Origin: Ylistrum balloti
Lineage: Eukaryota
DNA: 64,000 nt
Direction of reading: 5' to 3'
Assembly: GCF_031769215.1 (NCBI RefSeq)
Contig: NW_026782132.1
Span: 1,364,001 to 1,428,000, forward strand
In this document: in pieces, positions 58,872 to 63,976 of the stretch
How the letters are laid out: every line of letters begins with the position of its first letter
How positions within the stretch are numbered: position 1 is the stretch's first letter
Program-made: the position numbers and the translations under genes
The notes under the pieces: model-generated
Seen by the model: the letters and a program-made list of their open reading frames with translations, nothing else
What the model was told of the DNA's origin: nothing
Database searches by the model: none

Positions 58872-61800
58872 ATGGAGCTCCTCCGAACAACCTTACTGCT
58901 GGCAGGTAAGTGTAGTAGAATCAGGCGTGATCTATCAGTGTTACTAGCATAAAATGTATTGTTATATCAATTAAGATACTAAAACTTGCGTTGTTTACAT
59001 GTACATACAAGTTGCTAAAAATAAAAATAATGACAATGACGTGATGTCGGGGAAGTTCGTTTAAACATTTTATTCGTGTCCTTATACTTTAATTTATAGA
59101 CCTCCTAAATTCCACTTTATTTCATTTTCCTTTTTGCAACTGTAACTCTTTGCATGTTATGGCTGTTTTTTCAGTCGTGCCGGTACTTGTTCTTTGCCTA
59201 CCGTATTCAGAAGATGTCTCGCACAGCAAGCGTTGTAAGTATTTTCTCGGTACCATATATATACAATAATGAAAATAGGAGCATTTCACAATCAAGAATA
59301 AATGTTAACAGATAAAAGGAAGGCATTTCTCACTTGCCCAAAAGTTTGAGGGGCTATCATTGTTAAGAAAATTACCGATAGGTCAAGACACAGCAACATT
59401 ATTCTAAACAGATAACAGGAAACGCTTGCCTAAGCACCACCCACAATTCTTGGAATTATGAAGTACTAAGGTGATTATTGACTATACCAAGAGTATCATT
59501 TTCAAACGTGTATCACACATTAATTTTAATTGGCATTGTATCACTTCAAGGAAGATGAACATATCTATATAACACTGATGTAAAAATGAAATAAAAATAT
59601 GGCAAACTCGAAAATTCTGTTTGGGCTCTTAAAGGCACAACGTGCCGCTGGGATATACAAAATTAGATGCGAAACCGTTATTTATGCAGATTATGTATAA
59701 AAAGTTTTTGACAAACACATCAAAAATTATAACAGAAAGAAATATGTTTAGACATATCGAGTTTTCTCGTACATGAAGCAGTTAAATCTCACTCTCTAAC
59801 CAGGTGCTAGATTTGTCTGACCTATGCTTTAAGGTCTCTGTTCCTAATTTATAACCGCAAATTGGATTTATTTGTAATTGTGCGTTATTGGATGTAATTA
59901 TGCCTCATTTTGCAATGCGTCCCAAACGTTTGTCATTGTGTTACGAACACTAGTGAAGGAAACTCTTTGGCATTGTCTTGTTTCCCGAAAATTCTTTGTC
60001 TTCTTTCCCTGGCAATTTTTTGTCTTGTTTTCATGACGATTGTTTTGTCATTTTTTTAGGCAAAGATTTGTCTTGTTTTCATGTTTTCATCTTGTAATCA
60101 TTACAGAGTTTAATCTTTTTTCATGGTAACATCTGGTCTTGTTTTGCAGCCTCGGGTCCGTTATGTTTGGCGTGTTCTTTGTCTGACCATCCCAGCCAGT
60201 GCAGTAAGACGGTTCGCTGTGAGGAAGATGAGGTAAGGTGAGAATGGTGACGGACGGACGGCGGAAGGGCGTATATAGGCTACGTAACTGTTACACAGAT
60301 ACATGCGCAATTTCTTGTTAAGGGTGTACTTCTCTTAGAAGTGAAAAAAGTCCAGTATTAAATTTATTTCTGATGTTTTTTTTAAATGGTGTGATTAAAT
60401 TAAAAGCAAACGCTCAATATTTTGTTGCCTACTTTTACCGTTAAGGGCGCCAAAAAAGCATAACAGGAAATAGTTAATTTCCATATATTATTTCTTATAT
60501 TTATTTTAAAAATTACATTCATCTTTTAATAAAAGGTAAAGGGTATGGTACTTGGATATTACTTATTTAACCATCTTCTAGTATTAATATTTGAGATATT
60601 TTCAACGATACTTTTCATGGTTAAACAGAGAGGGTCTCTGTGGTTTATAGTTTCGCCCAAACAGTTTCCCCGAGATCAAGAGTCGGGTCCTACAAATCTG
60701 GGAAAGTAATCAGAATTCACGAATTTGAACAAAGTGATTTAAGGCGATAATTCATGCTGAATTTAACTGAAATCTACATAAGACTTCCAGAGACATACTC
60801 AAGGGAAGTAGCGACCAGAAAATGCTGAAATGTTGAGCTATAACCCGAATCACGCCGTATGCTGCGTTGTCAAAAATGTAGTATACAAAAACAAAAAAAT
60901 TCAAGATATTGTGTTGGAATTCATTTTATATTGAATTATGACTTACTTCCGGTCAAAATACCAGAGGAGCACATCCTTATGGTCTTAAAAACCAAGCACT
61001 GTTAATTAAATTTCATTTAATATAAATGATCTTACAAGGATACCGACATGCATCGTGAAGGTACCATTCTAAAGTGCCATGCCTACTCCATGCTAAGGTA
61101 GTGATATCATAGATAAGAAATCAGACTTAGATAAAAACATTGCCTATGGTAACCTTGGCTGTCCTTAACCTTAGCCAGTCCATATCAAAACCGTTCACTT
61201 ACATGTCCTGATTATTAACATCGAGAAGGTGTGCAACTAGATCTAGAAACTAGGACATTATATCATAAATTAATTAAATAGATAAGTTTGAAAATAATCC
61301 AGTATGCGATCCACGTAGTTTGAGCGGAAACATTCTGTTTACCACGTTCTATACGAGTAGGCTTGCTCAACTCTGGAATGTTTATGTATCTAGAATAATT
61401 GACAAAAACACATTTACTACATAGTGAAACGTGAGTAAAATGTTAAATCAAATATGATTTTGAAACCAGCATTGATCAAGGTACCGATAATAATATTATC
61501 ATACAGACAACTCCAACAAATGATCTAGATAGTCTAGATAGTCACGTCCGCGCTTCCCGAATCTTTGGTGTTTACTTGCCGCAGTTGATTAAAGGGCATG
61601 TTCCTAATATCACGATTTTCGTGGGAGGTGTCGACAGCTGACAGATAAACTAACAACACTGAGCTTTAAGAAATATGGGTTTATCAAGAGTACGTGGAAT
61701 CTGTAACATAATATTATAGGGAAATATTACATTATCTTTTGCTTAATGCACTTAAAATTACTTGACTTTAAGCACTTAAACTAAGATTTTATATGGCCGA

Positions 61801-63976
61801 TATTGTCGATACAGCAGAATCTACTTACCTTCCCGGAAACCCTGATACCATATACCTTATACATTTTCACGGGTCTCCGTACAAATCGTTCCTTTTTCAG
61901 AATTCTCTCTTTTGTTTCCTCTAGTTTGAGTTTGAATTGAAATTCTATTGACTCTTCTGGGGCGTCTTGTTCGTGTCGATTTTGGACGGAATTTGCACTA
62001 TTGCTGACGTTCAATATGATGCATTCGCAACTTAATACTTACAGGTATGTTACGTGGAAAAGGTGACGATTTCGGGAACGACGGACAAATTCAATCAAGG
62101 ATGCACTAGGGGACAGGTATGTCTGAGTTATTATAAATACTAAAATATTATTTACTTACTCGGGAAACTCAAGAATATTTTTGCATAGAACAGTTTGCAA
62201 CTAAAATTTATTGTGTTATTTAAATTTCAACTTTCTTTTATTTCTTTCCTTTTTAGATGTGTACATCTTACTTCGGAGCAGTAGGTCCACAAGTAGGGAA
62301 AAGAGAGAACAGCCGGCCACGTTCTGTACCCGGGAACAAAAACAAACGGGTGATACCTATATGTAATAAATGCTGTACTGGTGATCTATGCAACACTAAC
62401 GAGTGTGGTGCTGGAGCTACAACAGGTAAATAGGTCAACAAAATCAAACAAAGTAACAGCAGTTTTAATAGGTCAAGGACAAGAAAAAAATACATCAGAA
62501 ATACATTGACATTAAGTAAACAGTCCAATCAAAGATACGCTGAGAAAAAAATGTAAAATGAATCAACGATAGATAAATAGATTGACAACGGGTCAGAGAG
62601 AAATGAATATATTAAAGGAAGCAAAATAGGTCGATGAGAGTTATATGAATCGGTATCAGGTAACTAGGTCACCGATAAATAAATATATTATCAAAACATA
62701 ATCAGATCAATAGCTAAAAACGTCATCTAAAGTTAAAAAGGTCAATGCCAAAATACCTTGACTACATCTTGTAAAAGTGTATTAATCACTGACAACATTA
62801 TTTCTTACACCCTATAAACGTAAAGCACGTGTCCACCATTAACATTTGAATTAAATTTTTTAGCTTTTTTAAGTGTTATTATTTTTCATAGATCCTCCTC
62901 CAACTGTGTCACCCAACAGTACTACCTGGGTCCGATTAATCGGAGGCTCGAATCCCTATGAAGGTCGTGTAGAAGTGTTCCATTCCGGCCGATGGGGAAC
63001 AGTATGTGATGATCATTGGGGTGGAGAAGAGGCTGCCGTAGTTTGTGGAATGCTCGGTTTTGGACGGTATTTGATACAATTTAATATATTATAATTTTGT
63101 AATGAAGGTTCAACGTAGCAGTAATTATGTATTGGAATGATTCAGGATCTATTACAATACAAATTTCTTTAATTACATAATGTTAACATCCCTGGACGAA
63201 CACGAGTAGCATTTTAAAGCGTCTTGCATTTTTAACTGAAACTTTGTTTTTCTAAGACAGCACAAAATCACCAGTAGAATGGATAATCATAGTAAAAAAA
63301 TTTTCCATGTCAACGGAAAAATTCTTTGCTAGCAAAAAATAAAGACAATCTATTAATTCCTTTCCGATGCTAATCACTTATACTGAAATGACGACTTAAA
63401 TAATGTAATGTAACGACAGTGTTGTTGCATTGTAGTGATGGAGCCGGAGCAGTACCAGCCGCTGGGTTCGGAAATGCGCCAAGCTATGCCCGTATTTGGC
63501 TCGACGAAGTTAACTGCACTGGAACCGAAACTCTGATAGATCAATGTCAACACAACGGCTGGGGTGTCAATGACTGCTACCATAACGAGGATGCGGGTGT
63601 AGTGTGTTCTCCAAGTAATTTTATTTATCTATTTTTTATCTAAGAACACGTCTTTTGCTTTCATCGAAAACTGCAACTCATTTTCTTTACCAAAATCTTT
63701 TCGTATTCATATTACTATGTATATTATATTCCTCAGTGAGAAATCAGGACAACTTCATACTTCTTGTGGATACTGGAGTCGGCGGCCTTATCTTTCGCAT
63801 GGACATCGACACGCAGAGTTTCTCTCCTATACCGATGAACCCTCTGTATTCACCTTCAGCTATCGACTATGACCCCACAGAGGCCCGTATCTACTTCGTC
63901 GACCCGACTCTCCGACAGCTCCTTAGCGTGCACTTTAGCGGTACCGACATCCGGGAACTTGAGCAGCTTGATGAAA
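58872..63976 (+). CDS. Mosaic extracellular protein: signal peptide, Ly6/uPAR-like three-finger domain, group A SRCR domain, start of a YWTD/LDLR-class-B propeller (continues beyond the window)
   Basis: Exons 58872-58905, 59175-59234, 60150-60232, 62045-62116, 62257-62425, 62892-63066, 63436-63614, 63737-63976; phases 1,1,0,0,1,2,1,1 are continuous. CLAC...C...C...VC...GC...MC...[11 protein letters not shown]; [30 protein letters not shown]...[18 protein letters not shown]...[12 protein letters not shown]; [36 protein letters not shown]. Confidence 0.88.

What the first reader, a model, noticed from the sequence alone, without database searches (positions are those of the whole stretch)
58872..63976. 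Three-finger (Ly6/uPAR-like) domain fused to SRCR and a YWTD propeller
Seen: eight phase-continuous exons give signal peptide, a Cys-rich module ending in CCxxxxCN, a Pro/Thr linker, a six-Cys SRCR domain and an LDLR-class-B-like blade. Established: LU/three-finger domains usually occur alone, in tandem, or as receptor kinase ectodomains, while SRCR and YWTD propellers belong to scavenger and LRP-type receptors. Inference: I do not recognise this three-way combination; it may be a lineage-specific pattern-recognition or endocytic receptor built by exon shuffling, and the domain boundaries fall on phase-1 introns.
Basis: partly seen in the sequence, partly recalled or inferred. Interest (0 to 1): 0.7.

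Follow-up and report, generated by a model that had tools for sequence, protein, structure and literature searches.

The report
Scallop three-finger–SRCR–propeller secreted protein
The eight exons are real and form the start of a 19-exon scallop gene for a secreted protein (three-finger domain, then two SRCR-plus-propeller units) that is already in RefSeq and conserved across bivalves and snails, so it is unstudied and misnamed but not a one-off invention.

Summary
Observation confirmed. The eight exons have GT-AG borders and continuous phases. They are the first 337 residues of a 19-exon, 913-aa gene that runs about 10.6 kb past the window. All 19 exon peptides match RefSeq XP_060070214.1 exactly (Ylistrum balloti, "LRP6-like").

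Architecture: signal peptide, a 12-Cys three-finger-like module, then two copies of [6-Cys SRCR + six-blade YWTD propeller], then stop. There are no LDLa repeats, EGF domains, membrane span or tail. It is therefore secreted and not an LRP or an endocytic receptor.

The three-finger call rests on concordant but weak evidence. Pfam scores are below cut-off. A 19-sequence profile hits only three-finger proteins in the PDB (PSCA, E 0.0018). AlphaFold models are good for fingers 1-2 only. Every module border is a phase-1 intron, which fits exon shuffling.

The architecture is not specific to this genome. Full-length orthologues exist in scallops (85% identity), oysters (60%), mussels (58%), abalone (48%) and freshwater snails (37-45%), auto-named LRP4/5/6-like. 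Intronless full-length mRNA contigs from an oyster-type and a Lymnaea-type run carry all three module types. I found no paper on the family.

Verdict: a real, catalogued but undescribed molluscan family. Its function is only inferred.

The parts
58824..58829 (+). TATAAA box 43 bp upstream of the ATG; likely core promoter
   Evidence: Read directly from the sequence. The upstream lipocalin-like gene ends near 55828. Promoter function is inferred, not tested.
58872..58905 (+). Exon 1: start codon and first half of the signal peptide ([11 protein letters not shown])
   Evidence: Exact match to XP_060070214.1 residues 1-11. The most hydrophobic 19-mers of the protein start at residues 1-8.
59175..59234 (+). 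Exon 2: rest of the signal peptide and a short spacer. It is followed by a phase-1 intron, which is the border before the three-finger module.
   Evidence: exact match at residue 13.
60150..60232 (+). Exon 3: three-finger module, part 1 (CLAC...C...C; Cys 1-4)
   Evidence: Aligns with the N-terminal CxxC...C...C of the mollusc orthologues.
62045..62116 (+). Exon 4: three-finger module, part 2 (VCYVEK...GC; Cys 5-6, second finger)
   Evidence: In the AlphaFold models of orthologues this region forms the long beta-hairpin.
62257..62425 (+). Exon 5: three-finger module, part 3. It holds Cys 7, the VGKR motif, a basic insert of about 20 residues, then [11 protein letters not shown] and a 12th Cys. 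It is followed by a phase-1 intron.
   Evidence: A paralogous exon (51% identity) lies in a tandem LU-LU gene on contig C374.
62892..63066 (+). Exon 6: Pro/Thr linker and the first half of SRCR domain 1
   Evidence: PF00530, E 1.2e-14. PDB hits to CD163, SCARA5, MSR1, DMBT1 and MARCO SRCR domains.
63436..63614 (+). Exon 7: second half of SRCR domain 1 (six Cys in all, two exons, group-A type). It is followed by a phase-1 intron.
   Evidence: PF00530, E 6.7e-13; Cys positions.
63737..63976 (+). Exon 8: first blades of YWTD propeller 1. The gene continues outside the window, at window-equivalent 64088-74625 (L003 1088 to L004 1625). Exons 9-12 complete propeller 1, 13-14 encode SRCR 2, and 15-19 encode propeller 2 and the stop codon.
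   Evidence: PF00058 on exons 9, 10, 11, 16, 17 and 18; PF00530 on exons 13 and 14. All exons match XP_060070214.1 exactly.

Best explanation
Shown: this is the 5' third of the Ylistrum balloti gene for XP_060070214.1. The gene has 19 exons and encodes 913 aa. It is one of a conserved mollusc family of secreted mosaic glycoproteins. The order of parts is a signal peptide, one N-terminal three-finger (LU-like, 12-Cys) module, then two tandem units. Each unit is a group-A SRCR domain joined directly to a six-blade YWTD beta-propeller. The protein then ends, with no EGF, LDLa, membrane span or tail. The modules are separated by phase-1 introns. The SRCR+propeller unit is a seven-exon block that was duplicated before bivalves and gastropods split.

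Inferred: the protein works outside the cell as a soluble, multivalent binding protein. The two SRCR domains keep the acidic motifs (CDD, LDE, EDAG) that in other SRCR proteins hold Ca2+/Mg2+ and bridge to anionic ligands. The two propellers would give rigid protein-docking faces, and the three-finger cap would add a further binding loop surface. The most likely role is capture or cross-linking of extracellular ligands (haemolymph, mucus or matrix), not endocytosis by the protein itself.
For: Gene structure and identity:
- 19 GT-AG exons, 2742 nt, one open frame.
- Every exon peptide is identical to P0301 = XP_060070214.1, whose contig length (1,666,881) equals that of the window's contig.

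Domains:
- PF00530 on exons 6, 7, 13 and 14, and PF00058 on exons 9-11 and 16-18.
- On the whole protein: SRCR 9.7e-58 and Ldl_recept_b 2.1e-47 over 7 stretches.

Secreted form:
- The only hydrophobic 19-mer is at residues 1-22, there are six N-glycosylation sequons, and the C-terminus is polar.
- The gastropod orthologues read in full also end just after propeller 2.

Three-finger module:
- 13 invariant Cys/Gly columns across 19 mollusc sequences.
- The profile hits only three-finger proteins in the PDB, with PSCA at E 0.0018.
- Foldseek's top hits are PSCA, CD59 and irditoxin.
- 31 of 32 VIA-align rows are three-finger folds, with Z up to 5.2.
- The nearest named ESM Atlas neighbours are nearly all LU, toxin or activin-receptor families.

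One transcript:
- Intronless contigs L015 (894 aa, Met to stop) and L013 carry LU+SRCR+YWTD.

Conservation and constraint:
- 85% identity to other scallops, 60% to oyster, 45-48% to Physella and abalone, over the full length.
- The Physella tblastn pieces break at matching residues around the LU/SRCR1/propeller-1 borders.
- A second individual's DNA shows 3 synonymous and 1 non-synonymous change in the exons.

SRCR cation-site mechanism: PMC7043408.
Against: - No RNA run of this species was found, so expression and splice junctions here are supported only by RefSeq identity and by relatives' mRNA.
- Function is entirely inferred; I found no paper on the family.
- High conservation and single copy in this scallop fit a housekeeping or developmental role at least as well as an immune one.
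- The three-finger module is below every Pfam cut-off: 15.2 bits against 24.8 for PF00021, and 17.6 against 20.9 for PF01064.
- Its third finger was not modelled (pLDDT below 50).
- I read the SRCR acidic residues from motifs. I did not map them residue by residue onto SALSA.
Confidence: 0.6

Rival explanations
1. It is a secreted modulator of developmental or matrix signalling, not a scavenger. Its LRP4/5/6-like propellers would bind Wnt-pathway or agrin-like ligands as a soluble decoy or adaptor. The three-finger cap might act like LYPD6, an LU protein known to bind LRP6.
For: - Sequence conservation is strong over the full length: 60% between scallop and oyster.
- In this scallop genome only one match to exon 8 lay outside this gene, and it is in a gene of different architecture. 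That is atypical for fast-evolving immune receptors.
- RefSeq pipelines name it LRP4/5/6-like because the propellers score best against those proteins.
- LYPD6 and LYPD6B are among the structural and profile matches of the cap.
Against: - No ligand, expression or phenotype data exist.
- The LYPD6 matches are no better than those to other three-finger proteins.
- I saw no NxI motif in the scallop cap on reading the sequence.
- Hygrophilan snails have several paralogues, which looks more like an effector family.
Confidence: 0.25
2. It is a membrane-bound endocytic or pattern-recognition receptor of the LRP or scavenger-receptor type.
For: It contains SRCR and LDLR-class-B modules, which occur in scavenger receptors and LRPs.
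Against: - The stop codon comes directly after propeller 2, and the next gene (RPS3, opposite strand) follows.
- There is no hydrophobic segment other than the signal peptide.
- There are no LDLa, EGF or tail motifs.
- The gastropod orthologues read in full end at the same point, and the others align to within a few residues of the C-terminus.
Confidence: 0.05
3. The N-terminal Cys module is not a three-finger domain but another small disulphide-rich fold that merely shares the CxxC...CCxxxxCN spacing.
For: - All Pfam scores are below cut-off.
- The AlphaFold models reach only pLDDT 61-64 and leave the C-terminal 40-50 residues unmodelled.
- The module has 12 Cys, not 10, and a basic insert of about 20 residues.
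Against: - Four independent weak tests all point to the same superfamily and to nothing else.
- UniProt names a fragment of the Biomphalaria orthologue 'UPAR/Ly6 domain-containing protein'.
- A paralogous module sits in a tandem LU-LU gene of this genome.
Confidence: 0.1

Closest known systems
RefSeq XP_060070214.1 (Ylistrum balloti, 'LRP6-like') and its orthologues: XP_021363240.1 Mizuhopecten, XP_033742175.1 Pecten, XP_069129572.1 Argopecten, XP_022327034.1 Crassostrea virginica, XP_063415706.1 Mytilus trossulus, XP_046547672.1 Haliotis rubra, XP_059146362.1 Physella, XP_055896651.1 Biomphalaria
   Same: This is the identical protein. The orthologues have the same architecture from the three-finger cap to the C-terminus, at 37-85% identity.
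   Different: Nothing differs. These are automatic predictions with misleading LRP names, and I found no study of them.
LDL-receptor family (LRP4, LRP5/6, LDLR)
   Same: Six-blade YWTD (LDLR class B) propellers, with PF00058 above cut-off.
   Different: There are no LDLa repeats, no EGF module after each propeller, and no membrane span or NPxY tail. Here each propeller is preceded by an SRCR domain.
Soluble SRCR-superfamily proteins (DMBT1/SALSA, CD5L, SSC5D, Mac-2BP) and group-A SRCR receptors (MARCO, SR-A, SCARA5)
   Same: SRCR fold with six Cys encoded on two exons (group-A style). The acidic cation-site motifs are kept. The protein is secreted (PMC7043408).
   Different: It has only two SRCR domains, each fused to a propeller, plus a three-finger cap. 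None of the listed proteins has YWTD or LU modules.
Ly6/uPAR (LU) and other three-finger proteins (PSCA, CD59, GPIHBP1, LYPD6, snake toxins, TGF-beta/activin receptor ectodomains)
   Same: The Cys framework (CxxC start, CCxxxxCN end) and the beta-hairpin fingers 1-2. PSCA is the best profile and Foldseek match.
   Different: It has 12 Cys, a basic insert of about 20 residues in finger 3, and no GPI signal. It is fused upstream of unrelated modules. It scores below the Pfam cut-offs.
Dreissena polymorpha XP_052233588.1 and the SRCRxN-propeller-EGF genes of molluscs (such as the one on contig C376 of this genome, and Patella 'DMBT1')
   Same: They draw on the same module set. The Dreissena protein has the same type of three-finger cap plus YWTD and SRCR.
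   Different: The order and number differ. Dreissena has cap, propeller, EGF, then three SRCR. The C376 gene has many SRCR, then a propeller and an EGF, with no cap.

Membership tests
Three-finger / Ly6-uPAR (LU) superfamily | Cysteine framework: N-terminal CxxC, spaced Cys 3-7, C-terminal CCxxxxCN | tested here: met
   Window residues C37, C40, C49, C55, C61, C79, C85, C122-C123 and C128-N129. These columns are invariant in 19 mollusc sequences. Two extra Cys (C119, C133) are also invariant.
Three-finger / Ly6-uPAR (LU) superfamily | Score above the curated cut-off of a family model (PF00021, PF00087, PF01064) | tested here: not met
   P0301:30-140 scores 15.2 bits on PF00021 (cut-off 24.8) and 17.6 bits on PF01064 (cut-off 20.9). 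The best orthologue scores are 21.2 bits (Biomphalaria fragment) and 20.7 bits on PF01064 (Pecten). I therefore file it as three-finger-like, with the subfamily unresolved.
Three-finger / Ly6-uPAR (LU) superfamily | Three-finger beta fold | tested here: inconclusive
   AlphaFold models of orthologue modules reach pLDDT about 80-87 for fingers 1-2 and below 50 for finger 3. Foldseek's top hits are PSCA (probability 0.99), CD59 and irditoxin, but all at E of 0.15 or more. In VIA-align, 31 of 32 rows are three-finger folds, with Z up to 5.2 over about 50 residues.
Three-finger / Ly6-uPAR (LU) superfamily | Profile similarity to solved members | tested here: met
   The 19-sequence profile against the PDB gives PSCA at E 0.0018. 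The four weaker rows (E 3.8-9.6) are also three-finger proteins: a long neurotoxin, SLURP-1, LYPD6 and a weak neurotoxin.
SRCR superfamily, group A | SRCR domain above the Pfam cut-off, six Cys, encoded on two exons | tested here: met
   PF00530 scores 54.8 and 49.2 bits on exons 6 and 7, and 50.3 and 42.6 bits on exons 13 and 14. There are six Cys per domain. A phase-2 intron lies in the middle of each domain.
YWTD / LDLR class B beta-propeller | Six YWTD-type blades per propeller, with PF00058 above cut-off | tested here: met
   PF00058 scores 24-45 bits on exons 9-11 and 16-18, with 7 stretches on the whole protein. Reading the sequence gives six [ILV][FYL][FYW][VAT]D motifs per unit.
LDL-receptor-related proteins (the RefSeq name LRP4/5/6-like) | LDLa ligand-binding repeats, an EGF module after each propeller, and a membrane span with a cytoplasmic tail | tested here: not met
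   The Pfam scan of the whole protein shows no LDLa or EGF family. There is no hydrophobic segment apart from the signal peptide, and the stop codon follows propeller 2. It is not an LRP family member.

The most novel reading that the evidence does not exclude
This is an undescribed, ancient (pre bivalve-gastropod split) family of secreted mollusc proteins. In it a three-finger cap regulates or cooperates with its own EGF-less YWTD propellers, as an in-cis version of the LYPD6-LRP6 type of LU-propeller contact. That would give a self-contained extracellular switch or adaptor that has escaped notice because pipelines call it 'LRP4/5/6-like' and Pfam does not score the cap.
Probability: 0.1. Interest if true: 0.55.

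Novelty: new variant of a known kind. Interest (0 to 1): 0.3.

Why it matters
Three points follow for annotation and for mollusc biology.

- Dozens of RefSeq entries named LRP4/5/6-like are not LDL-receptor relatives. They are soluble proteins with a three-finger cap and two SRCR-propeller units.
- The gene is a clean example of module assembly through phase-1 introns. It also shows a seven-exon block duplication that has been kept for hundreds of millions of years.
- A conserved secreted protein of this kind is a reasonable candidate for work on mollusc haemolymph, mucus or matrix biology, including in the snail hosts of schistosomes.

It does not open a new class. All parts are known folds, and the family is already catalogued.

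Tried and rejected
- Pfam on the three-finger exons one at a time gave nothing. A six-frame scan of the genome with PF00021 did not reach this locus. This is expected for a domain split over three short exons.
- Word-index searches with the cap alone found nothing beyond the query itself.
- No RNA run of this species was offered. The single run, X1, proved to be genomic DNA of another individual, with introns present, so it could not test the junctions.
- My first reading from the early hits was 'a gastropod genome, family confined to gastropods'. The wider profile search and the exact RefSeq match overturned it.
- Literature searches by domain words and by twelve accession numbers found no paper on the family. 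Two SRCR papers were read and do not cover it.
- A Biomphalaria differentially expressed gene named 'SRCR type 1 protein M130, partial' (PMC13619432) could not be tied to this family, so I did not use it.
- Joined step left out: I sent the spliced model to search tools exon by exon, by reference only. I made the joined translation only inside scripts, to check the frame. Whole-protein scans used the identical database protein P0301, once listing of cluster members had returned it.
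Full report
**1. What is in the window**

Reading 58500-64000 and translating the proposed exons gives eight exons: 58872-58905, 59175-59234, 60150-60232, 62045-62116, 62257-62425, 62892-63066, 63436-63614 and 63737-63976. Each has an AG acceptor and a GT donor. The phases are continuous and the product is 337 residues with no stop.

The peptide contains, in order:
- a hydrophobic leader;
- a Cys-rich module (C37 to C133) that starts CLAC and ends CCTGDLCN;
- a Pro/Thr linker;
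- a six-Cys SRCR domain on two exons (PF00530, E 1.2e-14 and 6.7e-13);
- a YWTD-like stretch.

A TATAAA box lies 43 bp upstream of the ATG. The nearest upstream coding sequence is a separate lipocalin-like gene that ends near 55828.

**2. The whole gene**

The window is G000:C275:1364001-1428000, in a 648-Mb eukaryotic assembly. I fetched the next 30 kb and extended the model to 19 GT-AG exons, 2742 nt and 913 aa. The stop is at window-equivalent 74625.

Pfam on single exons confirms Ldl_recept_b on exons 9-11 and 16-18, and SRCR on exons 13-14. The architecture is a signal peptide, the Cys module, then [SRCR + six-blade YWTD propeller] twice, then the end.

The two SRCR+propeller units have matching exon lengths (175/184, 179/179, 240/240, 169/169, 128/131, 157/157, 110/106) and matching phases. 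They are therefore a duplicated seven-exon block. All five module borders (leader|cap, cap|SRCR1, SRCR1|propeller 1, propeller 1|SRCR2, SRCR2|propeller 2) fall on phase-1 introns.

Downstream lie a 37-bp minisatellite and then RPS3 on the opposite strand. There is no room for hidden 3' exons that would encode a membrane span.

**3. Identity**

I searched exon 8 alone against 1.84 billion representative proteins. This returned about 900-aa proteins of freshwater snails with the same layout, collinear with the window exon by exon.

I tested that. A profile of four snail proteins found full-length relatives in scallops, oysters, mussels, pearl oysters and abalone. The cluster look-up listed XP_060070214.1 of Ylistrum balloti, 913 aa, on a contig of 1,666,881 bases, which is the length of C275. 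All 19 exon peptides of my model occur in it exactly and in order. The gene is therefore already annotated in RefSeq, as 'low-density lipoprotein receptor-related protein 6-like'.

Full-length identity to orthologues:

| Species | Identity |
|---|---|
| Mizuhopecten, Pecten, Argopecten | 85% |
| Crassostrea | 60% |
| Mytilus | 58% |
| Haliotis | 48% |
| Physella | 45% |
| Lymnaea, Biomphalaria, Pomacea | 37-38% |

Every alignment runs from the Cys module to the C-terminus.

Unit 1 exons match unit 1 of the Physella protein best, and the SRCR exons and most propeller exons of unit 2 match its unit 2 best. The internal duplication therefore predates the bivalve-gastropod split. In the Physella genomic locus the tblastn pieces break at residues that correspond to the window's exon borders around the cap, SRCR 1 and propeller 1; this comparison is approximate.

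**4. One transcript?**

No RNA run of this species was available. The one run offered, X1, is genomic DNA of another individual. It gave a 3.9-kb contig with the introns present, 24 substitutions and one 30-bp insertion. Four substitutions lie in exons: three synonymous and one E>K.

Support for one transcript therefore comes from three other sources:
- the exact RefSeq model;
- L015, a 2765-nt intronless contig from run SRR11285565 that encodes the 894-aa oyster-type orthologue from Met to stop;
- L013, a 2731-nt intronless contig from SRR26439020, whose frame runs from the leader through the cap, both SRCR domains and both propellers of a Lymnaea-type orthologue.

**5. Is the Cys module a three-finger domain?**

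Sequence: twelve Cys, a Gly and the Asn of CN are invariant or nearly so in 19 sequences from bivalves and gastropods. The framework is the LU one, plus one extra Cys pair and a basic insert of about 20 residues after a conserved VGKR.

Family models: all scores are below cut-off.
- P0301:30-140 gives Activin_recp at 17.6 bits (cut-off 20.9) and UPAR_LY6 at 15.2 bits (cut-off 24.8).
- The best orthologue values are 20.7 and 21.2 bits.
- Both families have the three-finger fold.

Profile against the PDB: the 6-sequence profile hit only PSCA (E 0.069) and two snake toxins. The 19-sequence profile hit PSCA at E 0.0018. The four weaker rows (E 3.8-9.6) are also three-finger proteins.

Structure: AlphaFold models of the Physella and Dreissena modules have pLDDT about 80-87 for the first 50 residues (two beta-hairpins) and below 50 for the rest.
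- Foldseek's top matches are PSCA, CD59 and irditoxin, at weak E-values.
- VIA-align lists 31 three-finger structures among 32 rows, with Z at most 5.2.
- The nearest named ESM Atlas neighbours, by features and by structure, are nearly all LU, toxin, activin-receptor or TGF-beta-receptor clusters, with scores of 0.79-0.83 that count as leads only.

Other support: UniProt names an N-terminal fragment of the Biomphalaria orthologue 'UPAR/Ly6 domain-containing protein'. A paralogous module (51% identity in the last exon) lies in a tandem LU-LU gene on contig C374.

Together this makes a three-finger fold likely, about 0.9. The choice between LU and activin-receptor subtypes is open, and finger 3 is unverified.

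**6. What it is not**

A Pfam scan of the whole protein shows no LDLa and no EGF. The only hydrophobic 19-mer is the leader, and the C-terminus is polar. The RefSeq names (LRP4/5/6-like) are propeller-driven and misleading.

SRCR together with LDLR-B in one protein is not new in invertebrates. It appears in the supplementary tables of a survey of invertebrate SRCR genes (PMC10855680). It also appears in this genome's own SRCRxN-propeller-EGF gene on contig C376. A zebra-mussel protein has the same kind of cap in a different order: cap, propeller, EGF, then three SRCR.

**7. How it probably works (inferred)**

The protein is a secreted, glycosylated (six sequons), multivalent binder. Both SRCR domains carry the motifs WGT[VI]CDD, LDEV and EDAG. 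By my reading, these correspond to the acidic ligands of the two cation sites that mediate ligand binding in SALSA/DMBT1, MARCO, CD6 and CD163 (PMC7043408). I did not map them residue by residue.

YWTD propellers are protein-docking platforms in LDLR-family proteins and nidogen (established knowledge). Here each propeller follows an SRCR domain directly and lacks the usual EGF partner. The cap would add a loop-based binding surface.

High conservation, and the lack of a same-architecture paralogue in this scallop genome, leave two roles open. One is haemolymph, mucus or matrix ligand capture. The other is developmental or matrix signalling. I rank the first slightly higher. Nothing here tests either.

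**8. Novelty and verdict**

The gene is real, and the three-way combination exists. I found no publication on it.

I class it as a variant built from known module kinds. It is unstudied and misnamed, and of modest interest (0.3).

Noticed in passing
L003 1730-5675 (window-equivalent 64730-68675), inside intron 9: A 35-bp minisatellite of about 113 copies (92-94% matches) fills most of the 4.7-kb intron between the second and third propeller exons.
   Followed up: partly
L004 3319-4765 (about 1.7 kb downstream of the stop codon): A 37-bp minisatellite of about 39 copies lies between this gene and the RPS3 gene on the opposite strand.
   Followed up: partly
window 54127-55828 (+): Two open stretches read like a lipocalin of the apolipoprotein-D type (GLWYEIGK...; ...DYTVIYLDDNYAIEYDC...). 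This is a separate gene upstream of the finding.
   Followed up: no
L004 about 6800-9500 (-) and L005 about 2200-8560 (+): A ribosomal protein S3 gene lies on the minus strand, with cathepsin-L-like exons further downstream. Large Cys/Pro-rich repeated open frames lie on the minus strand of L005, 6744-9471.
   Followed up: no
G000:C374:1271367-1279699 (-) (L009/L010): A gene with two tandem LU-like modules joined by a Pro/Thr/Ser linker. Its last LU exon is 51% identical to exon 5 of the finding.
   Followed up: partly
G000:C376:146406-154758 (+) (L011): A gene with several two-exon SRCR domains followed by a YWTD propeller and an EGF module. It uses the same modules in a different order and has no three-finger cap.
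   Followed up: partly
window 59973-60083 (intron 2) and 61315: Intron 2 holds a 24-bp tandem repeat of about 3-4 copies. A second individual (run X1) carries a 30-bp insertion at 61315 in intron 3, and about 0.8% substitutions across 60911-64000.
   Followed up: partly
Mollusc orthologues (alignment A5, columns about 62-95): A conserved VG[KR][KR]R motif is followed by a basic, variable insert ending in K/R-R-x in finger 3 of the cap. It looks like a possible convertase-type dibasic site inside a disulphide-closed loop. This was not tested.
   Followed up: no
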